Assembly: GCF_006345805.1 (NCBI RefSeq)
Contig: NC_043025.1
Coordinates: 13,454,001-13,518,000 of the forward strand
Source of the DNA: Octopus sinensis
Lineage: Eukaryota
Reading direction: 5' to 3'
Length of the DNA stretch: 64,000 nt
Below, in pieces: positions 12,638 through 64,000 of this stretch. How positions within the stretch are numbered: position 1 is the first letter of the stretch; each line of letters starts with the position of its first letter. The notes below the pieces were generated by a model. The model was not told where the DNA came from and ran no database searches. It saw nothing but the letters and a program-made list of their open reading frames with translations. Both the position numbers and the translations under genes were made by a program.

Positions 12638-12668
<31 letters not shown>

Positions 12669-12716
12669 GTTGTTATTGCTAATACTATAGTTTTCAGATT
12701 TGATGTCGCAGTCCAT
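6764..12716 (-). CDS. Uncharacterised 674-aa protein, putative transcription factor: low-complexity N-terminus, Cys/His-rich domain, C-terminal coiled coil
   Basis: join(complement 11861-12716, 10734-10903, 6764-7762) = 2025 nt. Junctions GTTG|gtaagt..ttgccag|AT and AAG|gtatct..tttccag|TTT keep frame. An in-frame TGA at 12741-12743 supports ATG 12716 as the start. Confidence 0.85.
9272..9505 (+). mobile_element. tRNA-derived SINE family A (copies at ~331, 10003, 15076, 27770, 28450, 50700, 60725)
   Basis: Head gcggcgagctggcagaa..gttagcac...gagttcaaattcc; TSD aggtattgacct. Confidence 0.8.
9838..10383 (+). mobile_element. R4/Dong-type (RLE endonuclease) non-LTR retrotransposon 3' fragment, interrupted by a SINE
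   Basis: DRKIDANRPDIILKDLKQKSCLLIDMTVPIDINV ... TIPVVIGALG...EIQKIVLMGTAHIL; SINE at ~10003-10236 with TSD aaacaatacct. Confidence 0.8.
10734..10903 (-). CDS. Exon 2 of the Cys/His-domain gene: (D)CPKKTERAKMGHRCSFKVLLTMHSDQIGMWEVKLIGSHVEPEYAWVPPIKKVKWRK
   Basis: Poly-T tract plus cag acceptor, gtatct donor; 170 nt; non-repetitive island among repeats. Confidence 0.85.
11861..12716 (-). CDS. Exon 1 of the Cys/His-domain gene (poly-N/S/T/Q region, then KTFGLLKC...LLCNGEGSCRRKCGGIGDCIV)
   Basis: 856-nt open frame ending at a gtaagt donor, phase 1. Confidence 0.85.
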
Positions 12717-13859
12717 CTCTTCTTCGCATTCTCCCTTTCTTCACAAAAGGCCCCCAAGTCCAGTTTGGCTCTGACCTAGTCCGGACTCGAATCTCCCTCC
12801 TTTAACATAAAACTCCAGCCTGGCTTCACCTGGTCTCGAACTGCCGTCCTTTACACGAAGCTCCAGCCTGGCTTTACCTGGTCTTTAACTGCCGTCCTTT
12901 ACACGAAGCTCCAACTTGGTCTTGTCCCGGTCTGTAGCCTGCTCGGTTTGGTCTTTTCTGATTGTCAAGCACTTTCCCTTCTATGCCGAAGTCCAGCCTC
13001 GTCTCGCCCGGTCTTACGTGAATTTTATTTACGTAAAAGTCCACTCTGGCTCTTCTTGATCTTCGGCCAGTCCGGTCCGCCCTTATTTGATCCTTAAATT
13101 CTACCTCCACATAAAACTCCAGCCTGGCTCACCCCTGGTCAATAACCTGCTCGGCCCGGTTTTCTCTGCGCTCGAACCGGCTTCCTTTAATGTAAAATTC
13201 CAGCCTGGTCTTGAAGCCGTCCGGCCATTTCCTTCTATAATTTCTAACGTAGCACTGGCTGTCCCTGGTCTTTAGCCTGTCCGGCCTGGCTTTGTCCTAG
13301 TACACAGCCAGTCCGGCTTGGTCTTGACCGGTCTTCCTTTAGTGTAAAACTCCAGTTTAAATCCTGTCCTGATCTGTAACCAGTCCGGCCAGGACTTCCT
13401 TGATGTCCAACCTCTCCCTGCCTTGTCCAGTTTTTAGCTAGTCCGGCCTAGTCTACAGATTGTCCGGCCTGGCTTTGTCCTTATCACTGACCTGTCCAGC
13501 GTGGTTTTCTCGAGTCTGGAACCGCTTTCGTTTAATGCAAAACTCCAGCTGGGCCTTGTTATATTTCCGACCAGTGCAGCATGGCCTCTAACGCCTCCTT
13601 TTACACTCAAGTCCAGTTTGGCCTGGCTCGCTTTGGCCATTCAACATATTCCTTTATGTCAAAGCCCGGTGCTGTCTTCAACCGTTCCCCTTCGTATAAA
13701 AGGTCCGGCCTCGGTTAATCATTAATAGAACCTGCTATACTCGCACACACACACACAGACAGACACACACACACACACACAGACACACACACATACACAC
13801 ACTTCAGTCTTGAACAATCTTTACATATTTTTCAATATTTCATCTCATATAAAATTTAA

Positions 13860-24163: not shown

Positions 24164-27100
24164 TACCTTGTTGTTCAGTAAAGCATTGATGCCATCGGTC
24201 CACATGTCAAACTCTAGTTGGCTGCCAGCCAGGAAGTTCTGTGGAATTGTGGTCACTGGAATGACGGAGAAACACATCTCTGCTGCTATGTTCTGCAAAT
24301 ATAACAACAACAACAACATCAACAACGTTGGTGTCATCATCATCATCATTACCACCGCCCCCCAAACACCATCACAACCACCACCGCCGCCGCCACCACT
24401 ACCATCAACACCACCGCCGCCACCACCACCACCACTGCCGCCGCCACCACCACCACCGCCGCCACCGCCGCCACCACCACCACCACCAAAACCACCACCA
24501 CCACCACCACCACCGCCGCCACAACTTTAACGTAAAATAACTTCGTAAATATAAGTTTTTCTCAACAACGCTAAGAGTAAGTTTTACGTGACACATTCTA
24601 CCAGTAATACAAAGTTTTAAAGTGTTTAGTTACAAAAAATTATTTTCTAAATCTGCCGGTCAAAAGGTTAAAGACCCCAAATTCTTCCTCTCAGAAATAC
24701 AGAATTGTGTAACACACTCACCTTTTTCCGATTCTCTTTGACGTGGGAGCAATCTTTGCCGACAACCAGAGACTTTATATCAACAACTGACACTGCAATA
24801 CAAAGAAAATACAGGGAAATGAATGAATGCCACCACACACCAAAATACAATAGCATTCCATTGTGGTAGAGGTAGACCCAGGAAGACATGGGATGAGGTG
24901 GTGAAGGATGGTGTTTGATGGTATCAAACTTGAAATCTTCAAAGCCACAGTCGAACCAATTCTACTATATGGCTCAGAAACCTGGATGTTATCAAAGAAG
25001 CTTGAGAGGCAGTTGGATGGAACCTCCACTCGCCTCCTTATGAGAGCTCAAAATCTCTCGTGGAAGCGTCATCCAACCAAAATGCAAATATATGGGAAAC
25101 TACCACCTGTGTCATCTCTTGTGAAAAGTAGGAGAGTCCAGTTTGCTGGACATTGTTGTGGAACTGAAAAAGAGGTAATTTCTACTCTTCTCCTCTGGAA
25201 GCCATCTACTCGCAATACCAGAGGGCGCACACTCTCCTACCCTGATGTAATCTCCAGGGACACAGGCATCCAGCAACAGGACCTCCGTAATGCTATGATG
25301 GACCGTGAAGTCTGGCGCAGCATGGTAAATTCCATTGTCTCGACCACGGTTGAACAATGATGATGATGATGGTGTTTGAATGTTGGGCCTCGTTGAAGGA
25401 ATGACTAGTGACTGAGAGGTTTGGTAATGTGCTGTGTTTGAGAAGACCCATCAGGCCAAGTGATATCGTAGTCATGGCCAATGTTGCTGTCACATAACTG
25501 GCACTATTGCTGGTGTCGTGTGATCGGCACCCATGCCGGTGTCACGTAACTGGGACCTGTGCTAGTGGCACGTAAAAAGTACCATTTCAGTGATGAGCCT
25601 CGAAGAGGCAATGTGACCGATGCGAGAGTCACGTAACTGGCACGTAAAAAGCACCCATTACACTCTTGGTGTGCTTGGTGTTTGGAAGGGCATCCAGCTG
25701 TAGAAATCATGTGAAATCAGGCCACTCTTTACTCTTTTACTGGTTTCAGTCATGTGACTGTGGCCATACTGGAGCACCGCCTTTAGTCGAGCAAATCGAC
25801 TCCAAGATTTATTCTTTGTAAGCTTTGTACTTATTGTATCAGTTTCTTTTTGCGAACCGCTAAGTTACGGGAACGTAAACACACCGGCATCGGTTGTCAT
25901 GCGATGTTAGGTGGACAAACACAGACACGCAAGCACACACGCATATATACATATATACAATGGGCTTCTGTCAGTTTCCGTCTACCAAATTCACTCACAA
26001 GGCTTTGGTTGGCCCGAGGCTAGAGTAGAAGACACTTGTCCAAGTTGCCGCACAGTGGGACTGAACCCAGAACCATGTGGTTGGTATGCAAGCTACTTAT
26101 CACACAGCCACTCCTATGCCTAGTCATTTAACAATCACATTATCAAGATCTCAACGTGACAAGATAACACTTGATTAGTTTCCAACAATATGAATTAAAA
26201 AACATTACATTTGACACTATAATCTGAACACAAAAGGGTTGAAGTTACATCTTGGATATCTACACCTATACATACACAAGCACAAACACATACAACAATA
26301 AAGGATCAACAAGGACATACACTTATTGGGCAGTTGTTCCAAAGTAGGGGTCTCTTCGCTGTTCCAGTCTCCGTAGTGAAAGGTTTTTAGGTTAGGTGCA
26401 AGCTGCCACCAATGTTTCTCTGAAAAATACGATATTACAAGGGGATGAGTCAGAGAGTAATGCAATTTTTATTTGCTTTAATTTTTGATTTAGCTTTGTA
26501 TACACGAGAGAGAGAGAGAGAGAGTCTAATAGAAATGCAGGTAAAATGTGTGAATCTGTGTGTATGTATGTATGTATGTATGCATATATGTATGTAATGT
26601 GTTTGTATGTATGTATGTATGTATGCATATATGTATGTAATGTGTTTGTATGTATGTATGTATGTATGTTTGTATGTATGTGTGTGTGTGTGTGTGAATG
26701 TGTTTATGTATGTTTATGTGTGAATATATGTGGCTTTATAACTATGTGTATTTGTACTGCTTTTTATGTGTATATGAAAGTAAGGAAGAAGGAGAGCATG
26801 AGGGAGAGTGAAAGGAAGAGGGAGAGCATGAGGGAGAGTGAAAGGAAGAGGGAGAGCATGAGGGAGAGTGAAAGGAAGAGGGAGAGCATGAGGGAGAGTG
26901 AAAGGAAGAGGGAGAGCATGAGGGAGAGTGAAAGGAAGAGGGAGAGCATGAGGGAGAGTGAAAGGAAGAGGGAGAGCATAAGGGAGAGTGAAAGGAAGAG
27001 GGAGAGCATAAGGGAGAGTGATAGGAAGGTGAGTGTGAAAAAAAGATGTTTGAGAGAGAGAAAGGAAGAGAGAATCTGAAGATAAGTGAGTGTGATATAG

Positions 27101-29935: not shown

Positions 29936-30035
29936 NNNNNNNNNNNNNNNNNNNNNNNNNNNNNNNNNNNNNNNNNNNNNNNNNNNNNNNNNNNNNNNNN
30001 NNNNNNNNNNNNNNNNNNNNNNNNNNNNNNNNNNN
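29936..30035. other. Assembly gap (100 N)
   Basis: Exactly 100 Ns, the usual placeholder for a gap of unknown size. Confidence 0.99.
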
Positions 30036-39610: not shown

Positions 39611-42600
39611 ATGGAAATGTATGTGTTAAACTCTTTGGAGTTTGATGTCTTTGGTATTGTGTTCTTCTTGTACTTGTTCTACCACGTGTTCGCAAAATGC
39701 GTTGGGGAAGCAACAGACTCGTCGCACCAGGTGAACTTGATGAATTACATTTACGACAGCGAATCCGAGGAGAAGACGACGAAAGGTAAGCCTCGGAGAA
39801 GACGTACCCGCCGCAAGAAAAAACAGAAGCGTGATGGGGACTACACGAAGAAAGATGTGTTGCATATGATAAAGCTGTTACTACAGTCGAAACTGGTTAC
39901 CAAGAAATACCCAAAGTACAGCGAACTCCCACCTGAGTTTGGGACGGAGTATTACAACCAGAAATCTGATATAGAATACTACCCTGAACCGAAAACTCCA
40001 CAAGGCAGGAAACCGTTACCCGCTCCCGTGACCAAAGTTAAGTATCAGTTTCCACCAAGCATTCACTACACCGGAACCCGCCACCCTGTGAATGAGGCTG
40101 AGCGCAAAAGCACCCCTCCACCCGAGTTGTACTTTGTTGAACCCAGTGTTCAGCCGGAGGTCCCACCGGAGCCAGAGACCAGACAGCCTAAGCCAAAAAT
40201 TCAGCGAAATGGCCCACCCCAACCAAGGCCTCAACCTATGGAAACATACCACTTAGAAAATTATGTTGAAGTTTATCCTGAACTGAAGTTCCCATCAAGC
40301 AGTGAGCCCCAACTGGAGCCGGAGATCCAGCACGATAGCCCACCCCCACCTAAGCCTGAATCCAAGATTACATACAGCTTAGAACCTTATGTTGAGGCTT
40401 ATCCTGAGCTAAAGTTCCCATCTATCAGTGAGCCCCTACCGGAGTCAGAGCCCAGTATCGAATACCGTGAGCCTAGGCCAGAGATCCAGCATGATAGCCC
40501 GCCCCCAAGTAAGCCTGAATCCAAGATTACATACCATTCAGAACCTGAATTTGAGGCTTCTCCTGAGCTAGAGTTCCCATCTAGCAGTGATCCCCGGTGG
40601 AAGCCAGAGATCCCTGAATCAGAACCTTATGTTGAGGCCTTTCCTGAGCTAGCATTCCCATCTAGCAGTGAACCCCCACTGGAGCCAGAGACCAAAATCA
40701 AATACCAGTCTCTACATGATATTGAATCCCATAAGTCTGATCCAAAGATTACATACAGCTTAGAACCTTATGCTGAGGCTTATCCTGAGCTAGAATTCCC
40801 ACCTAGCAGTGAGCCCCCACTGGAGCCAGAGACGAAAATCGAATACCAGTCTGAACCTGATGTTGAATACCATGAGCCTGGGCCAGAGGTCCAGCCCAAA
40901 GGCCCTCCCCCATATAAGCCTGAACCTAAGGTTACATCTCCTGAGCCAGCATTCCCATCTAGCAGTGAGCCCCCACTGGAACCAGAGATCAAAATGAAAG
41001 ATCAGTCTCTACCTGATATTGAATACCGTAAGTCTGATCCAAAGATCCAGCCAGAAGGCTCTCCTCCACAAAAGCCTGAATCTAAGGTTAGTCTCAGCTT
41101 AGAATCTGATGTCGAGGCTTCTCCTGAGACAAGCTTCCCATCAAGCAGTGAGCCCCCACTGGAGCCAGAGACCAAAATCGAATACCAGTCTGAACCTGAT
41201 GTTGAATACCGTGAGCCTGATCCAAAGATTACATACAGCTTAGAACCTGTTGTTGATGCTTATCCTGAGCTAGCAGTCCCATCTAGTATTGAGCCGCCAC
41301 AGAAACCAGAGATCAAAATGAAAGATCAGTCTCAACCTGATATTGAGGCTTATTCTGAGCCAGAATTGCCATCTAGCAGTGAGCCCCCACAGAGGCCAGA
41401 GACTAAAATCGAATACAAGTCTGAACCTATTAGTAAATACAGTGAGCCTGGGCCAGAGATCCAGCGTACCGGTGTATCCACACCTGAGCTCAGGCACGAG
41501 AGAATTCCTTCACCTGAGCCCAAAATGGTGTCCAAGTTTGATTCTGATATTAATGTCTATACTGATCAGCCAGGGCCTGTTATCAAACCTGATATACAGC
41601 ATGATACTAAACCCCGAGATGAGCCCATGACTGATGTTAAGTCTGAACCTGAACTCGCACCCAAGATGTATTTTCAGCCTGAGATTGAGTACGAAATGCC
41701 ACCAGCTCCAGATACACCCATGACCCAGCCTCAACAGGAGACCAGTGATGAACCTCAGCCTGTGTCTGAGCCCCGGCTTAAGAGGAAGGACCAAAAGAAG
41801 ACTGTGGCAAAACGCAAGTTTAAGCCGAAGCTTGAAACAGTATCGGAGCCTATTTTTGAACATGAACCTGATCTTGAGCCTGAGTCTAAGCCTGAGCCTG
41901 CTCTCCTGCCTAAGCCTGAGCCTGAGCCTGCTCTCCTGCCTAAGCCTCAGCCTGAGCCTGCTCTCCTGCCTAAGCCTCAGCCTGAGCCTGCTCTCCTGCC
42001 TAAGCCTCAGTCTGAGCCTGCTCTCCTGCCTAAGCCTCAGTCTGAGCCTGCTCTCCTGCCTAAGCCTCAGTCTGAGCCTGCTCTCCTGCCTAAGCCTCAG
42101 TCTGAGCCTGCTCTCCTGCCTAAGCCTCAGCCTGAGCCTGCTCTCCTGCCTAAGCCTCAGCCTGAGCCTGCTCTCTCTGCCTAAGCCTCAGCCTGAGTCT
42201 GCTCTCCTGCCTAAGCCTGAGCCTGCTCTCTGCCTAAGCCTCAGTCTGAGCCTGCTCTCCTGCCTAAGCCTCAGTCTGAGCCTGCTCTCCTGCCTAAGCC
42301 TCAGTCTGAGCCTGCTCTCCTGCCTAAGCCTCAGCCTGTTCCCCAGCCTGAGCTTGAGCTTGTGTTTCAGCCTGAGCTTGTGTTTCAACCAGAGCCTGAG
42401 CCATCTCCGGAACCTGAGATTCAATATGAGATTGAAGTGAAACCTCAGTCTGAGCCTGACATTGAGCTGCCACATAAAGTTTCTGAGCCTGAGATCAAAC
42501 TGCAGACTGAGATGGAGACTCAGACTGATGTTGAGCTTGAGTTTGAGGCTGGGCACCATCATGTGACCAAACTGCAGCTCGAGACCGACGCTGAGCATCA

Positions 42601-44182
42601 GCACGTCACCGAGCTCCAGCTGAAGACGGCGTGTCAGCGTCTGAGTGAATTCCAGCTTGAGACTGAGTGTGAGCACGTGACGGACCTGCAGCTTGAGTTT
42701 GTGTCTCAGCACTTGACCAAGTTGCAGATTGTAACCGAAACCAAGCACAAGACCAGCACTGACCACCGACACGTGACCGAAGTCCAGCTCAAGAATGTCG
42801 CTCCACCACAACCACACGAAACCAAACCCGAGTTCCAGTGCAAAACTGAGCCTGAGCCTCAACATTCTCCTGAACCTGAGTCTAAGACGATAACCAAGTA
42901 TGAGCCCAAAATTGACAATGAGACCCAAACTCATCACCAACATCATGATCTTGAGGCTGAGCTTCTGCACATGCGTGAGCACCAGCAAGAGACTGAGTAT
43001 CAGCTTGAGGCTGATTCGAACACTGACATCCACCTTCAATTGAAGTCTTATGCTGTGTGTGACCGCACGACCAGGATTGAGCTGGGTAGAGACAGTGTGT
43101 ACCAATCTGAGCCTGTGCTCTGTCAGGCCCACAAACTGAAGTACGAGACGGCACCCAAGCGCCCGTGGCACGCCTCCGAGACCCTTCTCCGGCAACGTAC
43201 TCAGCATCGATACATACCTGAGAGGACGTGTGAGCATGGCAACGAGACCTGGCTCAAAACGGTGAAGAGTGATCTGGACAGGAATGGAGTTCAGGTTGAG
43301 CCTGAGTGTCAAGATGAGGACGTGGCTCTGCTCAAGGGCTGCATTAGACCAGTATACGTGACTCAGTGCAAGTCAGATACTGATAGCAGTGATCAACTCT
43401 CGACTGAGCTTCGGTTTGGGACGGATACTGAGTCTGAGGCATCGTATCGCGTTGAGGCCAAGACTTGGTGTGAAACGCTGGCTGAGCTTCAGTTTGATAC
43501 GGAGACTGAGAATGAGACTGAGAGTGAGTATGAGCTTGAGAGTGAGTACAAGGCTGGGAGAGAATATCCTCAAATTGGGGTCTGGTGCCCGTCTCCGGCC
43601 AAGAAGACTGACAAAGAATGTGGGATCAAAACTGAGCACCTGCATCCAGTGACCCTCCGGCCTGAGGTGGAGCCTAAGCCATGTGGTGGTGTGACCACAT
43701 ACCAAGTCAAGAATGAAACTAAGTGCTCAGACGAGGCCAAGGCTGAACTTGAGCAGAAAAGTAAAACTGACCACCTACAGCCACCTTCTATGTCTGATTT
43801 TCAGATTGACTCTGTGCCCAGTTCTCATTTATTTTCTGAACTTCTGGCTGCAAGAGACGCCGATCGTTGGAATACCTCGAATCTCTTGTCAGATGCCCAA
43901 ACTGACCGTCAATGTGGTACGGTCCAAAATTTGCCTCAGTGTAAAACCAAGGACGACCCTTGTATTGTAGTACAAGCTGACCATCGACACGTCTCTGATT
44001 CCGAATCCGTAACAGATGTTGACCCTTCACACTTGACCGACTCCCAACATGAAACTCATTGTCCATTTGCGACTACTCAGATCAGAGACCAACCCAGGCC
44101 CTGTTATCCGCGTGTGTGTGAAGAATCTAACCAAAACAACGCCAACCGGTTCATCGTAACATTAATAATCCCCTATTCATAA
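39611..44182 (+). CDS. Intronless orphan Pro/Glu-rich repeat protein (~1523 aa), interrupted in this assembly by a compensating +1/-1 indel pair at ~42175 and ~42230
   Basis: ORFs 39611-42184 (857 aa) and 42362-44182 (606 aa) are in the same frame. GC is higher than in the flanks, and there is an AATAAA at 44419-44424. N-terminal hydrophobic segment VFGIVFFLYLFYHVFAKCV, followed by the basic run KGKPRRRRTRRKKKQKR. Confidence 0.75.
41891..42334 (+). repeat. 30-bp coding minisatellite (~15 units), (PEPALLPKPQ)n
   Basis: Unit (c/t)ctgagcctgctctcctgcctaagcctcag. Confidence 0.95.
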
Positions 44183-52442: not shown

Positions 52443-52689
52443 TCACTGCAGGAATTCATCCACGGCCACGGGTTTCCGGACCCACCCCCCAATGCTCGAC
52501 TCCACGCAGTGTTCGTAAAACTTCGTCTTCGCTTCCTGGTACGCCGCGGCCGACTGCTTCGTCTCGGCGTACGACAGGCTCGGGTCGACGTCAGTCATGT
52601 GCGACTGCTCGCAGTACTGCCGGAACCGTCGCAGCATCGCGGCTTTGCACAGTCGGCTGGACATGGTCGCCCCACTCTGGGTCGGGGAT
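52443..52689 (-). CDS. ADAR/D-like: ADAR-like terminal exon: SPTQSGATMSSRLCKAAMLRRF...YAETKQSAAAYQEAKTKFYEHCVESSIGGWVRKPVAVDEFLQ*
   Basis: Acceptor ccttgcag|A, TGA at 52443-52445; typical ADAR C-terminus (SRLCK, YxExK, YQxAK, GxWxxKP). Confidence 0.93.
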
Positions 52690-55600
52690 CTGCAAGGGAG
52701 GATAAATAAAAAAGTTACGTTAACCTCAAAAGGCATGAGAAAACCAGTATGGACATACATATCATCATCATCATCATCATACTATTATTATCACCCCCTC
52801 CAATGGCCCTGCCCCTCTCAAAATTCCTTCTCTGTGCTGGTGCCATGTAAAAAGCACTCAGTCCACTCTGCTGGGTGGTTGGCATTTGGAAGGGCATCCA
52901 GCCATAGTATGTACAGTATATATAGAGAAGCATATGTGGTGTGTATAAGACAGAGAAGGGCGTATAATAATCAATGTAGAAGTCAATAAGTGTATGGTAT
53001 TCGTGTGTGTGTGTATATATATATATATACAGAACACTATATGAGGTGTGTATAAGGTACAGGAGGGTATATATGAGGGGTGGTGATAAGTTCCTGGCTT
53101 TTAGGTATCGTGATAGGCCTGGCTTCTTCTTGAGCACAATGTAATGCCAAAGGTTTCGGTCATTCGTCATTGCCTCCGTGAGGCCCAACGCTCAGAGTGG
53201 AGGTACATGGCCCAGTGGTTAGAGCAGTGGACTCGCAGTTGAGGGATCGTGGGTTCGAATCTCAGACCGGGCGATGTGTGTGTTTATGAGCGAAACACCT
53301 AAGCTCCACACGACTCCGCCAGAAAGTAATGGCGAACTTCTGCAGACTCTTTTGCCACAACTTTCTCTCACTCTTTCCTCCTGCATCTTGCAGCTCACCT
53401 GCGATGGACCGGCGTCCTGTCCAGGTGGGGAACCTATACGCTGAGGAAATTGGGAAACTGGCCCTTATGAGCCAAGCATGGCTCGAGAAGGAACAAACAA
53501 CACTCAGAAGGTGCTTTTCACGTGCCACCAGCATTGGCCATTGTGCCTCTGTGAGGCCCAATGCTCAAAAGGCACCTCTTATGTCCAACTGGCACAGACG
53601 CCAGGCATCATATATAAAAAAACAAATGTTAAATAAATATAAAAAGGGATCATGCTACTCACTCTGTTACGATGCGTCCAGTCAATCCGTTGGTCAGTTC
53701 AATCTTGTCTTGACCTTTGGCCCAATTCAAAGCAAGCTCGGTGGATTCAGCATTCCTGAGATCATGGATCGGTGGTATAAACGACTGGTACAACCAGGGG
53801 TGGTTGATGCTGTAGCCGCGGGGCAACTGCGAGTTCAGTTCATCATAGAGTCGGCAGCAAACGGCTCGGGACAGATGACCGTGGTCAAACTGACTGGCTG
53901 GAAAATGGATGGAACAGAGATAAAAACAGAAAAGAAAAAAAAACATGCTGACATCATCATCATCATCATCATCATCGTTTAGCGTCCGTTTTCCATGCTA
54001 GCATGGGTTGGACGGTTCGACCGGGGATCTGGGAAGCCAGGAGGCTGCACCAGGCTCCATTCTGATCTGGCAATGTTTCTACAGCTGGATGCTCTTCCTA
54101 ACGCCAACCACTCCGAGAGTGTAGTGAGTGCTTTTCACGTGCCACTGACACAGGTGCCAGGGGAGGCTGGCAAACGGCCACGATCGGATGGTGCTTTTGA
54201 CGTGCCACCAGCACGGAAGCTAGTCAAGGCGGCTCTGGCATTGGCCACGTTCGGATGGTGCTTTTTACGTGCCACCGGCACAGAAGCCAGTCGAGGCGAC
54301 GCTGGCATCGGCCACGTTCGGATGGTGCTTTGGCCACGATCGGATTGGTGCTTTTTACGTGCCACCGGCACGGAAGCCAGTCTAGGCGGCGCTGGCATCG
54401 ACCACGTTCGGATGGTGCTTTTTACGTGCCACCGGCACAGAAGCCAGTCGAGGCGGCGCTGGCATCGGCCACGTTCGGATGGTGATTTTTACGTGCTACC
54501 AGCACGGAAGCCAGTCAAGGCGGCGCTGACATCGGCCACGTTCGGATGGTGCTTTTTACGCGCCACCGGCACGGAAGCCAGTCAAGGCGGCGCTGGCATC
54601 GGCCACGTTCGGATGGTGCTTTTTACATGGTCCCTACATTAGGGGACGACATTCCAGCTTTTATCAACATAAAACAGGAAGAATATTTTGAGCTGGAAAT
54701 GGTTTAAAACTGCAATTTCACAAAGGGTTTCCTTAATTGGTCCGACCCTGGCGTTTTTGTGCATGGTCGCACTCTAACGAACAAAACCAGAAATATAAAA
54801 ATAAAAAACATTAAAAAAACGAACGAACGACAAATGAAAGGGTATTTACCAAGGGTGATGCTTGAAAAGTAAAAGGGTGCCATGATTTTGGTGAGGAGAC
54901 AGCCTTGGACCCCTAGCACGTTCCACTTAAGGATTTTATCACAGGTTGACATCACCTGAAGCTGCTCTTGGCGACTCTGCGTTATGTCCATCGTCTCTCG
55001 AACCACTGTGTTTTCAATGATGTGTTCCAAGCTACCTGCAGAAGAAAACCACCATCAAATTAATCTTTATTATTTATCTATATATATAAAACTGTAGTTG
55101 CGTGTGTGTCTGTCTACTCCGATTTAGATTCCTAACTACTCCCACATTTTGCAGTGCAGTTTAACCAAATTCGGGTATCTTATAGTCGTGATTCATATCG
55201 AGCCCTTCTGGGTATTAGCGCGCGTCTACGATGAGTCTACGATTTTTAGAATAATTTAACATCATTTTTTATTCCATTTTAATGCATATTTTTTCGTGTG
55301 TCGATGGCGGCGGAGTTGGCGTCCATGGTCACACCTGCACCTGTTTGCTTCTCCCCCTTCTTCCCTCCCTCGTGAAGCTGTGGGGAAGGGAGTGTAAGGA
55401 AATCAACGTCGTAAAGCGTTGTCAAGGAGACCAGCGTTCTTTTAGAACAACGACTTCATGGCTTGAAGACACCAAAACAGAAATGGCTAAGAAAGCCCGA
55501 ATTGGCATCTATAAGGGAAGTAGCTCTCTAAAAATGCTTATATAGTTATTTCCCTTACAAACCCGAGCAACGCCGGGCGATACTGCTAGTTAATTATAAA

Positions 55601-57475
55601 AGAGAAGCCTGATCTTCATGTCTGTCTGTCTGTCCCGACGTATCTTAGAGGGAGGAGACAAGGGAAGGAATCAGAAGGGGAGATAACTCCTGTCACACCG
55701 TTTTGTTTTTGTTTTTTAGAAAGGAAAAAAGCTGTTGAGAGAGAAATAGTGAGAAAGAGAGATAGGGAGACAGACAGACAGGGAAACAGTATTCACCCGG
55801 GGTGGGTTGAGCTGGCTGACAAACCACCAAAGTACGGATCTACCAAGCACTAGTGCGAACGATTCTCCTTTACGGCAGCGAGTCATGGCCAACGAGGGTG
55901 GAAGATATTAAGCGACTACAATCCTTCGATCACCTCTGTCTACGCCGCATCCTTCGTGTCCGATGGCATCACTTTGTCTCCAACAATTCGGTGCGACACC
56001 AGTGCAAAATCACCTCCCTCCGACAAGTCTGCGTTGGCTGGGTCATGCCCTCCGTCGTCAACCAGGAGAATTCATCTACAAAGCAATTGCCCCAGCTCCC
56101 CTTCAGGGTTGGCGAAAGCAACGTGGTGGACAATGAAAAACCTGGCTGATGACGGTCAAGGCTGATCTAGAACCCAACCTACGAAGCAATTGCCCCAGCT
56201 CCCCTTCAGGGTTGGCGAAAGCAACGTGGTGGACAATGAAAAACCTGGCTGATGACAGTCAAGGCTGATCTGGAACCCAACCTAGGCTCCCATGTCTACG
56301 GCGTTCACCGCTGGAATAAGGAGTGGTTGGAGATCATGCGGTTGTTAGCCTCAAATCACCAGGCCTGGTCGGCGTTTGTGAGAGATGCAGCATTGAGGAT
56401 GAATGAAGCCAGCTCAACCCACCCTGGGTGGATGCTGTCTCCAACAATTCAGTGCGACACCAATGCAGAATCACCTGCCTCCGACAAGTCATCCTAACGA
56501 GACGTCCGCGTTGGCTGGGTCATGCCCTCTGTCCTCAACCAGAATTCATCTACGAAGCAATTGCCCCAGCTCCCCTTCAGGGTTGGCGAAGGCGATGTGG
56601 TGGACAACGTGACATTACCACATTTTATTTAGACACGAAGGAGTCACATTCACGCTGTGTGTGTGCATTCATAAACACACTAGGGCATCTACGTTCGGTG
56701 ACCGCAGTCACCTCCCCGGGACCTGGTCCCATGCCCAGCAACCGAACTCATAGGCGAAGAGGAACCCGGGATGCCGGTGTATTAAGGTGGACGGCTGCCA
56801 CCCGTCGAGGGTTAGAGCTCCCCATCGAAGCGAACTAAGAGCATGTCCACCGCGGATGGATTCACCCCCTGGCCGCATGGCTTCGTCCACTCAAGTCAGG
56901 GGCCCTACATGATTCCCCGCTGGTTCGCTCGGGGACATGCAGACAATCGGCGCACACACTTCATGCACAATATGCACGGAGAAGGACTCACCATCTGTGT
57001 ACCGTAAACTCAAGGCCCCATGATCTGATTCTTCAAATGCTGGTTTGTGAACTCCTCTGGCAATTTCTTCGTTATCTTCATGGGTAAGCAGTGCACTTGG
57101 CCTACAATCGGAAAGAAAAAAAAACATCAAACAAAAATATAAAGAGTGGCTGTGTGGTAAGTAGCTTGCTAACCAACCACATGGTTCCGGGTTCAGTCCC
57201 ACTGTGTGGCACCTTGGGCAAGTGTCTTCTACTATAGCCTCGGGCCAACCAAAGCCTTGTGAGTGGATTTGGTAGACGGAAACTGAAAGAAGCCCGTCGT
57301 ATATATGTATATGGGCGCAGGAGTGGCTGTGTGGTAAGTAGCTTGCTTAAACCACATGTTTCGGGTTCAGTCCCACTGCATGGCACCTTGGGCAAGTGTC
57401 TTCTACTATAGCTTCGGGCCGACCAATGCCTTGTGAGTGGATTTGGTAGACGGAAACTGAAAGAAGCCCGTCGTA

Positions 57476-58090: not shown

Positions 58091-61000
58091 ACACACACAC
58101 ACACACACACACAGAGGTCACGCAAGATGCCATGCACTGGCAGACTGAATCCTGGGACTGTGTGGTTCAGAAGTCAAATCCTCGACCATCCAACCATGCC
58201 TGTCCCTATCAATTATCTTGACGGATTACAATAAAACAAAAACCAGACACTGGACTTACTTGCTCAAGAAGATACTATAGTCACCGGAGGGGGGGTCACT
58301 GAGGAAGAGGTGAAAGGTCACGTCCTTTTTTACATTCAAAAGACCCCCACTTTCGGGTGACATTTCGTATATACAGATGGGGGAATTCGGCTCAGCCAGG
58401 TAGCGTTGGAGTTCTAAATACAGGTACCTGAAAAAGATGAAATGAAGAAGGAATGTGTAGGAATCTGTATTTTTGTGTGTGTGTGTGTACACATCTAGGT
58501 ATGTGCTTCTTTATATATATATACTAGCAGTATCGCCCGGCGTTGCTCGGGTTTGTAAGGGAAATAACTATATAAGCATTTTTAGAGAGCTACTTCCTTA
58601 TAGATGCCAATTCGAGGCTTTCTTAGCCATTTCTGTTTTGGTGTCTTCAAGCCATGAAGTCGTTGTTCTAAAAGAACGCTGGTCTCCTTGACAACGCTTT
58701 ACGACGTTGATTTCCTTACACTCCCTTCCCCACAGCTTCACGAGGGAGGGAAGAAGGGGGAGAAGCAAACAGGTGCAGGTGTGACCATGGACGCCAACTC
58801 CGCCGCCATCGACACACGAAAAATTATGCATTAAAATGGAATAAAAAATGATGTTAAATTATTTTTTAAAATCGTAGACTCATCGTTGACGCGCGCTAAT
58901 ACCCAGAAGGGCTCGATATGAATCACGACTATAAGATACCCGGTTTTGGTTAAACTGCACCGCAAAATGTGGGAGGAGTTAGGAATCTAAATCGAAGGGG
59001 ACAGACACTCACACAACTACAGTTTTATATATATAGATATATGTTGGTGTAACATATGGATGCGAGACCTGGACACTAAAGAAAGCTGACCAGAAGAGAT
59101 TTAATGCATTCGAGCTTTGGTGTTGGAGAAGACTTTTGCGGATTCCATGGACAGCAAGGCTCACCAATGGAGAAGTTCTTAAGCAGATCAGGCCGAAAAT
59201 GTCGCTGGAAGCTAGGATCACCAAGCATAGATTGGCATATTTTGGTCATATTATGCAGAGGAAATCCCTGGAGAAGGACATCATGCTCGGAATGGTCAGT
59301 GGCAAGAGAGGAAGAGGCCGACCAAGAACCCGCTGGCTTGACACCATCAGGAGTGATACCGGAATGGACATGGCCAATCTGAAAGAAGCGGCCCAGGATA
59401 GAACTGACTGGAGGACACTGATCCAACGAGTGACCGAGAGTCGACTTTGACTGAACGGATAGAGAGATGTTGGTGTGTGTACATATATACAAGTGGATGC
59501 TGAAAAGCTCCTGGCTTTGGATAAAAGAAAATACAGAAAGATCAGTGAATTATGATTTTATTCAACATATTCCCCTCTCAGATTCACATACTGAGATTGC
59601 AGCGGTCCTTAAGTTTTTATAAGTCCTCTAAAAGAACTCAGGTTGCCACCCATTACACTCATGGAGTGGTTGGCGTTAGGAAGGGCATCCAGCCTTAGAA
59701 ACATTGCCAGATCAGAGTGGGCCTGATGCAGCCTTCTGGCTTCCCAGACCCCAATTGAACCGTCCAACTCATGCCAGCATGGAAAGCAGACGCTAATCGA
59801 TGATGATGATGATGATGATGTACATACACACATATATCTATCATTATCATCATTGTTCGACCGTGGTCGAGACAATGGAATTTACCATGCTATGCCAGAC
59901 TTCACGGTCCATCATGGCATTACGGAGGTCCTGTTGCTGGATGCCTGTATCCCTGGAGATTACATCAGGGTAGGAGAGTGCGCGCCCTCTGGTATCGCGA
60001 GTAGATGGCTTCCAGAGGAGAAGAGTAGAAATTACCTCTTTTTCAGCTCTACAACAATGTCCAGCAAACTGGACTCTTTTATTTATTTATATATATATAT
60101 CAACCAGTCGCTATGATAGATTGTTAGCCACTACACACATTTTTTTCTCTCTTTGTTTCTTCTGTGTCCCTTTCTGTAGAAGAGCGTAGGCTCGAAACGT
60201 GGAGTAGATGAAACCATGGCGACTGAAGAAGGGGTTTTTTCCTTGTGTTATTTGTCCTGTACTCTATTTTTGTTGTTGTTTAAGAAAAATGTCCAGTTCC
60301 TTGGGTTTGTGTTTATGTTTTCGTTTCTCGTTGTGTTCGACGTTTTTTTTGGTGTCCTGTACCCATATATGCATGTATATATACATGTAGAGGTAGGTAC
60401 GTACATATATGTATGTATATATGCATATGCTTTATTTATTATTTATATATGGTTTTGTGTACATGCACAAATGTGTATGGTGAATGAGTGTAGACAAAGC
60501 TAGAAGGTACATTATTTACATCATTTACATTTGACGGATATTTGTCCTCATCTTGTTTGTTGTTAACACAACGTTTCGGCTGATATACCCTCCAGCCTCC
60601 TTCAGGTGTCTTGGGGAAATTTTGAGCCTGGCATATAGCGTAGTGGTTAAGAGTGCGGGCAACTAACCCCAAGATTCCAAGTTCAATTCCAGGCAGTCCT
60701 GAATAATAATAATAACATAAAAAAATACCTATTTCTTTATTACCACAAGGGGCTAAACACAGAGGGGACAAACAAGGACAGACATAGGTATTAAGTCGAT
60801 TACATCGACCCCAGTGCTGTACTTAACTGGTACTTAATTTATCGACCCCGAAAGGATGAAAGGCAAAGTCGACCTTAGTGGAATTTGAACTCAGAACGTA
60901 ACGCAGATGAAATACCGCTAAGCATTTCGCCCGGCGTGCTAACGTTTCTGCCAGCTCGCCGAGAACCCAGGTTTGAAATTTCCCCAAGACACCTGACGAA

Positions 61001-63302
61001 GGCTGGAGGGTATATCAGGCGAAACGTTAAGTGTTAACAACAAACAAGATGAGGACAAATATCCGTCAAATGTAAATAATGTAAATAATTCTTCATTGAG
61101 GAAGAGAGAGAAAGAAGGGACAAGCCCTCTACCTGCGAAAGGCTCTGCATGCCAGCACTGCTGCATCGCTGTCGATTAAACATCGACCGTCGCTACTCAG
61201 GTTGCCGGGGGTCAGACACTGGTGACCGATCGCCATGGAGATTACTTCTGGTTTATTATCTGAAGAACACAAACGAGAAAACATTTCGGATATGAAAAAG
61301 GTCCATCAATAATGGCTTAAAAAATCTGGCATCTTTTCTTCCACCCGTCCACCCATTTTAACCCACCCTGGAGGGATTTAGGGGTAGAATCCACAGAGCA
61401 GAATATCTGGGCTGGATATGGGCTAAAAAAGTTATATATCTATACATGAAGCAATGAAGAAGTCCTGTACATGGTAGCTAGTCCTGTTAGAAATAGCAGC
61501 CAAATCTCTCATATTTGTTCATTGCAGGCAAACTAATGGTCAAAACCACTAAAAATTTCAGAAGAATAACAATAATAGGACTATCTCTCAATTGCTGGAT
61601 ATGTGAGGCAAACTAATGGACAGAATCACAATGACTTTTTTCTCCCATATGACATAGGAGTGGCTGTGTGGTAAGTAGCTTGCTTACCAACCACATGGTT
61701 CTGGGTTCAGTCCCACTGTGTGGCACCTTGGGCAAGTGTCTTCTGCTATAGCCCCGGGCCGACCAAAGACTTGTGAGTAGATTTGGTAGACGGAAACTGA
61801 AAGAAGCCCATCGTAGATATGTATGTGTATATATATATATATATATATATCTACATATATATATACATATATACATTTATATATGTAGGAGTGGCTGTGT
61901 GGTAAGTAGCTTGCTTACCAACTACATGGTTCCGGGTTCAGTCCCATTGCGTGGCATCTTGGGCAAGTGTCTTCTATAGCCATGGGCCAACCAAAGACTT
62001 GTGAGTGGATTTGGTAGACGGAAACTGAAAGAAGCCTGTCGTATATATGTATGTATATATATATATCCATCTGTCCTCTGTCTATCTATCGATCAGGAGA
62101 ATAACAATAATAGGTCTGTCTCTCAACTACTGGATTTGTTAGGCAATCTAATGGACAGAATCACAAAAATACCGATTAAAATGGAATCCAGCAGAGATTA
62201 TGTTTAAGTTATTCCTGGATTACCAAGCACACAATGCAATGGGACTAAATTAATGACCAATTATGTCATTGAAATCTCAAAGCTACAACATAACAATTGA
62301 TTAATTCAAAACGAGTCAAGTACATCAACATCAAAATAAAAATCAAATGGAAATTGTAGTTGTGATACCCGTGCTGGTGGCACTTTGGGCCTCACAGAGG
62401 AAATGACGAAAAACCGAGACCGCTGAGATATGTTGTGACTGCGAAGACTCGACATGAAGTGAGTTCATGGCTCGCAGGACAACCTGCTGTGCTAACCTTG
62501 GATCGTGGAGTGACCCACTGTTCTTGAGGAAACCTATTGAGTCAAGGACATCAACACCAACATCAAAATAAAAATCAAATGGAAATTGTAGTTAAGATAC
62601 CTGTGCCCGTGACACGTAAAAAGCACCATCCGAGCGTGGCCGTTTGCCAGCCTCTTCTGGCCCCTGTGCCAGTGGCATGAAAAAGCACCCACTATACTCA
62701 CTGAGTGGTTGGCATTAGGAAGGACATCCAGCTGTGGAAACATTGCCAGATCAGACTGGAGCCTGGTGCAGCCTCCTGGCTTCCCAGACCCCGGTGGAAC
62801 CGTCCAACCCATGCTAGCATGGAAAGCGGACGCTAAATGATGATGATGATGATGAATTAATATTCCTTTCATTGCCATGGTTTCTTTTTAGTATGTACTT
62901 TGGTATGTGTCGTTAAGTGTCCGACTGGGCCTGGTGCAACCTCCTGGCTTGCCAGACCCCAGTTGAACCGTCCAACCCATGCTAGGACGTTAAATGATGA
63001 TGACCAGTTTTTCATTGGAGGGCAATTAGAAAATTTTACTGTGGGATAGATAAAATTTGTGTACCACACGTACCCCATCGCCCACCTCACACCAGACCGC
63101 CATTAAAAAGAATAAAAGGGGATGAAGAACAAAAAAAAAACGGAAGAGAAAATGAGAATTTCTCACCGGACACAAGGATGACGGCTGCCACAGACTTCCT
63201 TCGATAACGTAAGACTGAATACTGTTCGAGATACATGTACAGGTGGTTGTAGACGAGGTCGGTGAACTGTTGGCCCAAACTTTTACCTTCTGGTGCCACT
63301 TC
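52443..63302 (-). CDS. ADAR/D-like: ADAR-family adenosine deaminase-domain protein, predicted catalytically inactive (ADAR/ADAD-like); 3' seven exons, 5' part outside window
   Basis: join(complement 63167-63302, 61133-61259, 58260-58427, 56992-57101, 54850-55035, 53663-53897, 52443-52689) = 1209 nt, all AG/GT flanked, phases compatible, no internal stops. Recognisable motifs: RRKSVAAVIL, VISMAIGHQC, FHLFLSDPPSGD, MSTCDKILKWNVLGVQG, GHLSRAVCCR, SRLCK, YAETK..YQEAK, GWVRKP. Confidence 0.93.
53663..53897 (-). CDS. ADAR/D-like: ADAR-like exon: SQFDHGHLSRAVCCRLYDELNSQLPRGYSINHPWL...LALNWAKGQDKIELTNGLTGRIVT
   Basis: Acceptor ttttccag|CC, donor ACAGA|gtgagt; 235 nt; aligns to GHLTRAICCR...VNHP...SVNW...EILDG..G. 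Confidence 0.92.
53950..54630 (-). mobile_element. LINE 3'-UTR-derived dispersed repeat with an internal 67-bp VNTR (~7-8 units) and (GAT)n tail; other copies at ~8110, 11040, 16000, 28010, 28890, 29585, 44770, 59650, 62530
   Basis: Shared core ggcgttaggaagggcatccagctgtagaaa...ccatgctagcatggaaagcggacg; unit number varies between copies. Confidence 0.8.
54850..55035 (-). CDS. ADAR/D-like: ADAR-like exon: SLEHIIENTVVRETMDITQSRQEQLQVMSTCDKILKWNVLGVQGCLLTKIMAPFYFSSITL
   Basis: Acceptor ttctgcag|GT, donor CTTG|gtaaat; 186 nt; aligns to [20 protein letters not shown]. Confidence 0.93.
55076..55590 (-). mobile_element. Inverted, near-identical copy of the Helentron-like element, in an ADAR-like intron
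   Basis: Reverse complement of 58523-59038 over its whole length with few differences. Confidence 0.6.
55840..56610 (+). mobile_element. Rearranged RTE-type LINE fragment with internal duplications
   Basis: VRTILLYGSESW...DHLCLRRILRVRW...RWLGHAL. Confidence 0.8.
56992..57101 (-). CDS. ADAR/D-like: ADAR-like exon: PSALLTHEDNEEIARGVHKPAFEESDHGALSLRYTD(G)
   Basis: Acceptor gattgtag|G, donor GATG|gtgagt; 110 nt; HKPAFE..G.L matches ADAR1 HYPVFE..GKL. Confidence 0.85.
58260..58427 (-). CDS. ADAR/D-like: ADAR-like exon: YLYLELQRYLAEPNSPICIYEMSPESGGLLNVKKDVTFHLFLSDPPSGDYSIFLS(K)
   Basis: Acceptor tttttcag|G, donor AGCAA|gtaagt; 168 nt; aligns to FLYTQLELYL...VQFHLYISTSPCGD. Confidence 0.92.
58523..59038 (+). 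mobile_element. Non-autonomous Helentron/Helitron-like element (HINE-type), in an ADAR-like intron
   Basis: 5' ACTAGCAGTATCGCCCGGCGTTGCTCGGG, 3' TTTTATATATATAGAT, no TSD seen. Confidence 0.6.
59051..59467 (+). mobile_element. 5'-truncated RTE/BovB-like LINE
   Basis: TYGCETWTLKKAD...WCWRRLLRIPWTAR...YFGHIMQR..LEKDIMLG...GRGRPRTRWLD; TSD atgttggtgt. Confidence 0.9.
60520..61089. mobile_element. Inverted pair (~105-bp arms) of Penelope-like termini, each with a degenerate hammerhead, enclosing SINEs
   Basis: 60520-60622 is the reverse complement of 60976-61089. The plus copy reads gacac-CTGACGA-aggctg...caggc-GAAACGTT-aagtgtt. Confidence 0.6.
61133..61259 (-). CDS. ADAR/D-like: ADAR-like exon: (D)NKPEVISMAIGHQCLTPGNLSSDGRCLIDSDAAVLACRAFR(R), the degenerate HAE region
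   Basis: Acceptor ttcttcag|AT, donor CGCAG|gtagag; 127 nt; not in the ORF track; aligns to VISVSTGTKC...LNDCHAEIISRR. Confidence 0.9.
63167..63302 (-). CDS. ADAR/D-like: ADAR-like exon (start of deaminase domain): EVAPEGKSLGQQFTDLVYNHLYMYLEQYSVLRYRRKSVAAVILVS
   Basis: Acceptor tcttctag|GAA, donor TCCG|gtgaga; 136 nt; matches the ADAR 'RRKVLAGVVM' segment. Confidence 0.85.
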
Positions 63303-64000
63303 CTAGAAGACAGGGGAAGGAAAACAATGACACACACACAAAACATGTTTACAGAGTGGGCCAAAAGTCATGCACCTAAACCATCCGACATTACATCATT
63401 GTTATTCACTGCAACATGGTCTTTGCTCAGAGATCTTGGTGCATGACTTTTATATTAGATTATATTAGATGGTGGACAAAAAAATATATTGTTGCATTTC
63501 ACTGAAATAGTTAATTCTGGGAGACAGCATGTGTGCCTCAGCACACCATCCTCATCCTTAAATGTCTGTCCAAATACACCTACATACATACACATGTATA
63601 CACATGTATGTACACACACGTGTATGCATATACACTTGTACACACACATACATACATATGCACATACACACACACACGTGCAGATACATACATATATATA
63701 CATGCATCATACACACACACACTTATATAGACACAAACACACACTTGCATACATACATATACACACATACACATGCACGCACACACACGTGCAGGCACAC
63801 GCACACGTGCATAGATATATATATACATACATATACATACACACACACGTGCATAGATACATTTATATACACACATGTATGCACACACACACTTATATAC
63901 ATACTTATATAGACACACAAACACACACACACGCATAGATACATACATATATACATACATATATATACACACATGCATACACACACGTGCATAGATACAT

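What the first reader, a model, noticed from the sequence alone, without database searches (positions are those of the whole stretch)
53663..57101. ADAR1-type second (structural) zinc site and IP6 pocket are kept although catalysis is lost
Seen: HKPAFE (56992-57101 exon), AVCCR and INHP (53663-53897 exon), plus DKILKW, and in the terminal exon just outside this interval (52443-52689) SRLCK, YAETK, YQEAK and WVRKP. Established (from memory): human ADAR1 binds a second Zn through H988 (HYPVFE), C1081/C1082 (AICCR) and H1103 (VNHP). IP6 is held by ADAR2-equivalent R401, K519, R522, W523, K629, Y658, K662, Y668, Q669, K672, W687 and K690; all are retained here except R522->K, and R400 and S531 are Cys. 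Inference: selection preserves the fold and cofactor core, not the chemistry. The signatures point to an ADAR1-related paralogue rather than a decaying pseudogene.
Basis: partly seen in the sequence, partly recalled or inferred. Interest (0 to 1): 0.75.

Follow-up and report, generated by a model that had tools for sequence, protein, structure and literature searches.

The report
Octopus ADAD: dead ADAR-like deaminase domain
These exons encode the C-terminal domain of the octopus ADAD ("ADAR/D-like") protein, an already annotated, catalytically dead relative of RNA-editing enzymes that has kept the residues for a structural zinc site and the inositol-phosphate core, so the gene is known and only the zinc-site detail is new.

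Summary
On the minus strand, seven exons with canonical AG/GT borders (63302-52443) splice into an open 402-aa A_deamin domain. It is 100% identical to residues 236-637 of RefSeq "adenosine deaminase domain-containing protein 1" of Octopus sinensis.

- **Catalytic site:** all four positions are replaced (H394/E396/C451/C516 become D312/A314/S370/T446).
- **Second zinc site:** the four ADAR1 ligands are present (H988/C1081/C1082/H1103 = H397/C491/C492/H510).
- **IP6 pocket:**

Across 20 mollusc ADAD-like proteins only 7.5% of columns are invariant. All four second-site ligands are among them, while the catalytic positions each carry 6-10 different states. dN/dS is about 0.1 between two decapodiform orthologues, so this is not a pseudogene.

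The gene is not new. It belongs to the bilaterian ADAD clade, which a published tree places as sister to ADAR1. Its squid orthologue, sqADAR/D-like, was shown to be inactive, and its IP6 residues were tabulated in 2023.

The part I did not find described is that invertebrate ADADs keep the second zinc site, while vertebrate ADAD1/2 and ADAR2 have lost it. Zinc and IP6 binding themselves remain untested.

The parts
63167..63302 (-). First exon of the gene inside the window (P0001 residues 236-281); start of the deaminase-domain region. The N-terminus and both dsRBDs (residues 1-235) lie beyond position 64000.
   Evidence: Canonical ag/gt borders and in-frame splice. tblastn of P0001 finds only residues 236-637 in the window.
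61133..61259 (-). Exon with the degenerate HAE motif 'DSDAAV': H394 to D312 (61167-61165) and E396 to A314. IP6 contacts R400 to C318 and R401 = R319.
58260..58427 (-). Exon with the degenerate PCGD motif 'PPSGD': zinc ligand C451 to S370. This 168-nt in-frame exon is absent from the O. vulgaris model P0002.
56992..57101 (-). Exon for the loop that corresponds to the ADAR 5' binding loop, with HKPAFE. H397 (57049-57047) corresponds to hADAR1 H988. The motif G-[AG]-H-x-P is kept in all but one (Q-G-H-x-P) of the 20 mollusc ADAD-like proteins.
54850..55035 (-). Exon with 'STCDKILKW': C516 to T446, with a non-conserved Cys447 one residue later. IP6 contacts K449, K452 (R522 to K), W453 and C461 (S531 to C). 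Also the degenerate flipping loop and TWDG dimer motif ('TMDI').
53663..53897 (-). Exon with AVCCR and INHP. C491/C492 (53859-53854) correspond to hADAR1 C1081/C1082. H510 (53802-53800) corresponds to H1103.
52443..52689 (-). Terminal exon with the stop codon. C-terminal IP6 contacts K571, Y596, K600, Y606, Q607, K610, W625 and K628.

Best explanation
The interval is part of the octopus ADAD gene, annotated 'adenosine deaminase domain-containing protein 1' and orthologous to squid 'sqADAR/D-like'. The protein has two dsRNA-binding domains followed by an ADAR-type deaminase domain, and it is a pseudoenzyme.

**Shown here**
- The active-site zinc ligands and the proton-shuttle Glu are all replaced.
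- Most RNA-contact residues, the base-flipping loop and the TWDG dimer motif have diverged.
- The four ligands of the ADAR1-type second (structural) zinc site and most IP6-contacting residues are strictly conserved under purifying selection.

**Inferred**
- The domain still folds around IP6.
- It still binds one structural zinc, which pins the long loop after the former PCGD motif onto the core.
- It binds no catalytic zinc.

**By analogy with the squid orthologue and vertebrate ADADs**
- The protein acts without catalysis, as a dsRNA-binding protein that can compete with or modulate active ADARs. The folded dead domain would serve as a scaffold or interaction surface.
For: - **Gene model.** Seven exons with canonical splice sites give an open 402-aa frame. 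It is 100% identical to RefSeq O. sinensis ADAD1 isoform X1, P0001. P0001 carries two dsrm domains plus A_deamin.
- **Residue mapping.** Mapping onto hADAR1 and hADAR2 is.
- **Conservation.** H397/C491/C492/H510 are invariant in 20 of 20 mollusc ADAD-like proteins, while the catalytic positions are highly variable.
- **All-or-none pattern.** Among 150 family representatives, the three core ligands C-C-H are all present in 113, all absent in 31 and partly present in only 6. This is independent of catalytic status.
- **Purifying selection.** dN/dS is about 0.10-0.14.
- **Expression of the orthologue.** The cuttlefish-cluster orthologue (P0004, identical CDS in P0267) is found on unspliced 2-3 kb contigs in six public run assemblies.
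- **Fold.** The AF2 model has pTM 0.84, and its best Foldseek hits are hADAR1 9b83 and hADAR2.
- **Clade.** ADAD clade membership has NJ bootstrap 88%. Clade members are named ADAD1-like by NCBI.
- **Literature.**
  - Squid ADAR/D-like has no deaminase activity and inhibits sqADAR2 in vitro (PMC10278661).
  - The hADAR1 second zinc site is defined in PMC7550611 and reported again from a cryo-EM structure in a preprint.
Against: - No metal or IP6 binding was measured.
- pLDDT around H397 is only about 65, and residues 172-206 of the domain are below 50.
- Two IP6 contacts are neutralised in octopus (R400C and S531C), and R522 is Lys.
- K690 is replaced by M, V or A in 11 of the 20 molluscs, so IP6 affinity may be lower.
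- The loop that carries H397 is acidic (THEDNEE), unlike an RNA-binding loop. Its role may therefore differ from that in ADAR1.
- The functional role is borrowed from squid in-vitro data and vertebrate ADADs, not shown for octopus.
Confidence: 0.82

Rival explanations
1. The locus is a decaying pseudogene of an ADAR, and the retained motifs are leftovers.
For: All four catalytic residues and most RNA-contact residues are lost.
Against: - The frame is open over seven exons with canonical splice sites, and a RefSeq model is identical.
- Orthologues with 56-59% identity occur as intact transcript-length contigs in public run assemblies.
- dN/dS is about 0.1.
- Thirty columns, including all four second-site ligands, are invariant across molluscs.
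- The squid orthologue is expressed and can be purified (PMC10278661).
Confidence: 0.02
2. It is a lineage-specific duplicate of cephalopod or mollusc ADAR1 that lost activity, not a member of the ancient ADAD family.
For: - The best PDB sequence hit is hADAR1: 164.7 bits against 144.4 for hADAR2.
- In the whole-library phmmer search, long proteins carrying the full HECC and H-C-C-H sets (ADAR1-type by motif and tree position) score 180-227 bits. In the same search the only vertebrate ADAD1 listed, P0102, scores 144 bits.
- It has the ADAR1-type H-C-C-H site.
- The squid paper could not place it with confidence.
Against: - NJ bootstrap of 88% supports a clade that joins mollusc, brachiopod, echinoderm, hemichordate, amphioxus, tunicate and vertebrate ADADs.
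- Published Bayesian and ML trees recover a lophotrochozoan or bilaterian ADAD clade (PMC6651903; PMC9989829).
- There is no Z-alpha domain.
- Higher scores to ADAR1 are expected if vertebrate ADADs evolve fast.
Confidence: 0.08
3. The four His/Cys residues are conserved for a reason other than a static structural zinc. They might form a redox-sensitive Cys pair or a protein-interaction patch, and the domain might bind no zinc at all.
For: - Binding was not measured.
- Park et al. themselves raise oxidation-sensing and interface roles for the site.
- The loop carrying H397 is acidic and modelled with modest confidence.
Against: - The same four positions coordinate zinc in human ADAR1 by ICP-MS, and a cryo-EM preprint reports the same site.
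- The ligand set is all-or-none across the family.
- The only common natural variant at the first position is Cys, also a zinc ligand.
Confidence: 0.1
4. It is a cryptic active deaminase that uses non-canonical residues.
For: Asp312 and Cys447 lie near the old active site. ADAD-clade proteins of Lingula and amphioxus keep the full HECC tetrad.
Against: - There is no His/Cys triad at the aligned positions, no Glu proton shuttle and no flipping-loop E488.
- Cys447 is not conserved even in squid.
- The squid orthologue showed no activity even at 5-fold excess (PMC10278661).
Confidence: 0.02

Closest known systems
sqADAR/D-like of Doryteuthis pealeii (Vallecillo-Viejo et al. 2023, PMC10278661)
   Same: - It is the orthologous cephalopod gene family. 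Two decapodiform proteins in this data set, P0003 and P0004 (the latter clusters with a Sepia pharaonis protein), share 56-59% identity in the deaminase part.
- The architecture is the same: two dsRBMs plus a dead deaminase domain, in a highly fragmented gene.
- E396A and loss of C451 and C516 are shared.
- The IP6 contacts are largely kept, including R522 to K.
   Different: - Octopus has also lost H394 (Asp) and has Cys at R400 and S531.
- The squid paper does not discuss the second zinc site ('zinc' occurs once, for the catalytic site).
- Activity and ADAR2 inhibition were tested for squid only.
Vertebrate ADAD1 (TENR) and ADAD2
   Same: - They fall in the same clade in the NJ tree (bootstrap 88%).
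- They combine dsRBD(s) with a dead deaminase domain.
- E396 is replaced by a hydrophobic residue.
- The IP6 contacts are essentially all conserved.
   Different: - Vertebrate ADADs have lost the second zinc site: C1081/C1082/H1103 are replaced by [KN]-[QRKD]-[RKQEN].
- They keep H394.
- They have one dsRBD.
- Identity to the octopus domain is about 30%.
- Their testis-specific role is not known to apply to molluscs.
Human ADAR1 deaminase domain (PDB 9b83)
   Same: - It is the best sequence and fold match.
- All four second-site ligands sit in the same motifs (HxPxFE, xCCR, xNHP).
- The IP6 core is shared.
   Different: - ADAR1 is catalytically active (HECC), with a basic RNA-binding surface, the flipping residue E1008 and Z-alpha domains.
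- The octopus protein has none of these.
Human ADAR3 and C. elegans ADR-1 (inactive ADAR-family regulators)
   Same: They are non-catalytic ADAR relatives that modulate editing through RNA binding or protein contacts (PMC7360552; PMC10278661).
   Different: ADAR3 keeps all catalytic residues and belongs to the ADAR2 lineage, which lacks the second zinc site. ADR-1 was not examined here.

Membership tests
ADAR-family deaminase fold (Pfam A_deamin, PF02137) | Significant match to the A_deamin profile over its full length | tested here: met
   E = 4.2e-71, 240 bits against a cutoff of 27, profile positions 1-329 of 329. Foldseek TM 0.73-0.80 to ADAR1 and ADAR2 structures.
Active ADAR (ADAR1/ADAR2) | Catalytic tetrad H394/E396/C451/C516 (hADAR2 numbering) | tested here: not met
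   The octopus residues are D312/A314/S370/T446.
Active ADAR (ADAR1/ADAR2) | Base-flipping loop (G487-E488-G489) and basic RNA-contact residues (R481, R510, K594 and others) | tested here: not met
   The loop reads G416-S417-L418. R481 is Ser, R510 is Gln, K594 is Glu.
ADAR1 type | Second zinc site ligands H988/C1081/C1082/H1103 | tested here: met
   H397/C491/C492/H510 by phmmer and MAFFT alignment. This holds at sequence level only. Metal binding was not tested.
ADAR1 type | Z-alpha (Z-DNA/RNA binding) domain N-terminal to the dsRBDs | tested here: not met
   A Pfam scan of full-length P0001 finds only dsrm, DSRM_2 and A_deamin.
ADAD (adenosine deaminase domain-containing) family | dsRBD(s) plus a deaminase domain with degenerate catalytic residues | tested here: met
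   The dsRBD exons lie outside the window.
ADAD (adenosine deaminase domain-containing) family | Phylogenetic placement with vertebrate ADAD1/2 rather than within ADAR1 or ADAR2 | tested here: met
   An NJ tree of 150 deaminase domains gives the ADAD group 88% bootstrap and the mollusc subclade 94%. It is distance-based and has no outgroup, so support is moderate. It agrees with published trees.
ADAD (adenosine deaminase domain-containing) family | Germline or testis-restricted expression and a role in spermatogenesis (vertebrate ADADs) | not tested
   No octopus expression data were examined. Squid ADAR/D-like is expressed at low level in nervous tissue and gill (PMC10278661).
IP6-dependent ADAR/ADAT1 core | Basic and aromatic residues lining the buried IP6 cavity | tested here: met
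R319, K571, K600, Y606 and W625 are invariant in 20 molluscs.
IP6-dependent ADAR/ADAT1 core | IP6 actually bound and required for folding | not testable with these tools
   This needs native MS or a structure of the recombinant protein.

The most novel reading that the evidence does not exclude
The ADAD lineage may have begun as an active, two-zinc ADAR1-like enzyme. Brachiopod and amphioxus members of the clade still carry HECC plus H-C-C-H.

Catalysis would then have been lost independently in molluscs, echinoderms and vertebrates. The structural zinc and 5'-loop module stayed invariant in most invertebrate lineages and was discarded only in sea urchins, tunicates and vertebrates.

That would make the zinc-pinned loop, rather than the active site, the carrier of the conserved non-catalytic function of invertebrate ADADs. 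It might, for example, be a protein- or RNA-docking surface that modulates ADAR2.
Probability: 0.3. Interest if true: 0.5.

Novelty: already known. Interest (0 to 1): 0.3.

Why it matters
The gene itself is ordinary. It is an annotated ADAD1-like gene whose squid orthologue has been cloned, shown to be inactive, and tabulated for IP6 residues.

The modest added value is comparative. The zinc site thought of as an ADAR1 peculiarity is also strictly conserved in catalytically dead ADADs of molluscs and other invertebrates, yet it is absent from vertebrate ADAD1/2. This separates the structural cofactors from the chemistry in a natural experiment.

It suggests that invertebrate ADADs are good material for asking what the second zinc and its loop do apart from editing. 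It also gives a simple marker for sorting ADAR-family pseudoenzymes.

Cephalopods are the animals with the most extensive mRNA recoding, so a conserved inactive family member that can inhibit ADAR2 in vitro is of some interest to that field.

Tried and rejected
- **First MAFFT alignment.** Aligning whole proteins with the reference domains scattered terminal residues, and the HMM built from it was unusable. I replaced it with domain excision by phmmer followed by L-INS-i.
- **Deep nodes of the NJ tree.** The midpoint-rooted tree placed some H-C-C-H sequences next to ADAR2. Their names show they are bivalve ADAR1-like and nematode proteins, so the deep NJ topology is not trusted. I do not claim that H-C-C-H is ancestral to all ADARs.
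- **Distances between the four ligands.** I wanted to measure them in the AF2 model, but no coordinates are exposed.
- **dN/dS, octopus against decapodiforms.** Synonymous sites are saturated (pS above 0.85). Only the decapodiform pair was usable, and even there dS is about 1.3. P0004 and P0267 have identical coding sequences and are uninformative.
- **Hydra ADAR and C. elegans ADR-2.** A short-segment PDB search did not print their alignments, so the state of the second site in them was not read.
- **Other long ORFs in the window.** Pfam scans found nothing.
Full report
**What is in the sequence**

The finding lies on the minus strand.

I extended the gene model by eye and by script. Seven exons each have an AG acceptor, and the six internal ones a GT donor:
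- 63302-63167
- 61259-61133
- 58427-58260
- 57101-56992
- 55035-54850
- 53897-53663
- 52689-52443

They splice into one open frame of 402 codons ending in a stop.

Pfam assigns the product to A_deamin over the full profile, with E = 4e-71. The best solved relatives are human ADAR1 (9b83, E = 3e-47) and human ADAR2 (1zy7, E = 5e-41).

**Identity of the gene**

The 402 residues are 100% identical to residues 236-637 of RefSeq [quoted passage not shown] (P0001, 637 aa). That protein has two dsRNA-binding domains in front of the deaminase domain and no Z-alpha domain. The dsRBD exons lie beyond position 64000.

The closest relatives are:
- two decapodiform cephalopod proteins at 56-59% identity, one of which clusters with a Sepia pharaonis protein;
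- bivalve and gastropod "ADAD1-like" proteins at 35-41%;
- many other ADAR-family proteins.

**Residue-by-residue check**

I rebuilt the human ADAR1 and ADAR2 domain sequences from the printed alignments and anchored the numbering on the HAE motif. That numbering reproduces C966, C1036, H988, C1081, C1082 and H1103 in ADAR1, and H394, E396, C451 and C516 in ADAR2.

In a MAFFT alignment the octopus residues are as follows.
- **Catalytic positions:** D312, A314, S370 and T446. All are lost. Cys447 is displaced by one position and is absent from the squid and cuttlefish proteins.
- **Second zinc site:** H397, C491, C492 and H510. All are kept.
- **IP6 contacts:** R401, K519, W523, K629, Y658, K662, Y668, Q669, K672, W687 and K690 are kept. 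R522 is Lys. R400 and S531 are Cys.

The remembered ADAR1 ligands are those established by Park et al. 2020 through mutagenesis and ICP-MS (PMC7550611), and a cryo-EM preprint reports the same site.

**Is the pattern selected?**

Several comparisons say yes.
- Among 20 mollusc ADAD-like proteins only 30 of 402 columns are invariant. The four second-site ligands are all among them, which has a chance of 2.6e-5 for four given columns.
- C491 and C492 are the only invariant Cys out of 11.
- The four catalytic positions show 6, 6, 9 and 10 different states, the last count including one gap.
- Five IP6 contacts are invariant and four more are nearly so.
- Between two decapodiform orthologues dN/dS is 0.14 overall and 0.10 in the deaminase part. 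dS is about 1.3, so the ratio is approximate.
- The cuttlefish-cluster orthologue lies on intron-free 2-3 kb contigs in six public run assemblies, and one such contig carries the other decapodiform orthologue.

A pseudogene is excluded.

Across 150 representatives of the whole family, the three core ligands C-C-H are all present in 113, all absent in 31 and partly present in only 6. Their presence is independent of whether the catalytic tetrad is intact: 86 are active with the site, 27 dead with it, 23 active without it and 14 dead without it. This all-or-none behaviour is what one expects of a single metal site.

**Fold**

An AlphaFold2 model of the 402 residues has mean pLDDT 79 and pTM 0.84. 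The weak parts are residues 172-206, which correspond to the former flipping loop and dimer helix, and the loop carrying H397, where pLDDT is about 65.

Foldseek finds only ADAR deaminase domains, with human ADAR1 9b83 first (TM 0.76/0.80) and ADAR2 practically equal.

**What else has decayed**

Most ADAR2 RNA-contact residues are replaced: R481 to S, E488 to S, R510 to Q, K594 to E and K376 to Q. The dimerisation motif TWDG reads TMDI. These positions vary among molluscs.

The loop bearing H397 is acidic (THEDNEE), and G-[AG]-H-x-P is kept in all but one of the 20 molluscs. The domain therefore probably does not engage dsRNA the way ADARs do. The zinc site more likely pins this loop as a structural or docking element. 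That last point is inference.

**Family placement**

In a neighbour-joining tree of 150 deaminase domains:
- the three cephalopod proteins group together (100% bootstrap);
- they sit inside a mollusc clade (94%);
- that clade sits inside a group (88%) which also holds proteins NCBI names ADAD1-like from Lingula, Branchiostoma, Acanthaster, Lytechinus, Saccoglossus and Styela, a Ptychodera protein named 'double-stranded RNA-specific adenosine deaminase-like', and vertebrate ADAD1/ADAD2.

This agrees with a Bayesian tree of lophotrochozoan ADARs (PMC6651903). It also agrees with the ML/Bayesian analysis of Zhang et al. 2023, which places ADADs as the sister group of all ADAR1s (PMC9989829).

So "ADAR1-related paralogue" is fair. 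The precise name is ADAD, and the H-C-C-H signature is shared by ADAR1-type and ADAD-type proteins rather than diagnostic of ADAR1.

Within the ADAD group the second site is kept in molluscs, brachiopod, starfish, hemichordates and amphioxus. It is lost in sea urchin, tunicate and all vertebrate ADAD1/2 examined. Human ADAR2 lacks it (Y-Q-K). The deep nodes of my tree are not reliable.

**What is already known**

Vallecillo-Viejo et al. 2023 cloned the squid orthologue as "sqADAR/D-like" (PMC10278661). They reported that:
- it has no deaminase activity;
- in excess it inhibits sqADAR2 but not sqADAR1;
- E396, C451 and C516 are lost;
- its IP6-binding residues, including R522 to K, can be tabulated;
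- it resembles mollusc ADAD-like proteins.

Loss of catalytic residues in mammalian ADAD1/2 is also published (PMC7360552).

None of the papers I could search mentions ADAD together with the ADAR1 second-site ligands. The conservation of that site in invertebrate ADADs and its loss in vertebrate ADADs therefore appears not to have been described. The search covers only open-access text.

**Verdict**

The object is a known, annotated pseudoenzyme gene whose orthologue has been characterised. Only the second-zinc-site detail and its phylogenetic distribution are new. Interest is modest.

Noticed in passing
window 58260-58427 (-): The O. vulgaris protein model P0002 (571 aa) is identical to the O. 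sinensis protein except that it lacks its first 10 residues and exactly this 168-nt in-frame exon, the one with the former PCGD motif. This is either an exon-skipped isoform or an annotation gap.
   Followed up: no
related proteins P0125 (Lingula anatina) and P0128 (Branchiostoma lanceolatum): These proteins fall in the ADAD group of the NJ tree and are named ADAD1-like. Yet they keep the complete catalytic tetrad HECC as well as H-C-C-H. The ADAD clade may therefore contain active enzymes, and catalysis may have been lost more than once.
   Followed up: partly
related proteins P0223, P0229, P0244 (unnamed, ENA assemblies): These natural variants have Cys instead of His at the H988 position (C-C-C-H). 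Park et al. 2020 found that this same substitution raises human ADAR1 activity.
   Followed up: no
related protein P0221: An ADAR-like protein with HECC and H-C-C-H is filed under the green alga Cymbomonas tetramitiformis. ADARs are regarded as metazoan, so this looks like contamination or a transfer.
   Followed up: no
window 57179, 57356, 61693, 61923 (-) and 12 further sites: About 16 copies of a tRNA-derived SINE-like repeat (core GGTTAGCAAGCTACTTACCACACAGCCACTC) are scattered over the window. Four of them lie in introns of the ADAD gene.
   Followed up: partly
window 24905-25357 (+), 59037-59447 (+), 59853-60086 (-): These are short open stretches that resemble one another and look, by eye, like the C-terminal tails of retrotransposon reverse-transcriptase ORFs. 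Two of them lie in an ADAD intron. The two scanned (24905-25357 and 59037-59447) gave no Pfam match.
   Followed up: partly
window 6767-7849 (-), 11730-12740 (-), 42221-44179 (+): These are long open stretches of 361, 337 and 653 codons with low-complexity runs (poly-N, poly-G/A, PKPQSEPALL repeats) and no Pfam match. They may be exons of neighbouring genes or repeat-derived.
   Followed up: partly
window 29936-30035: An assembly gap of 100 N.
   Followed up: no
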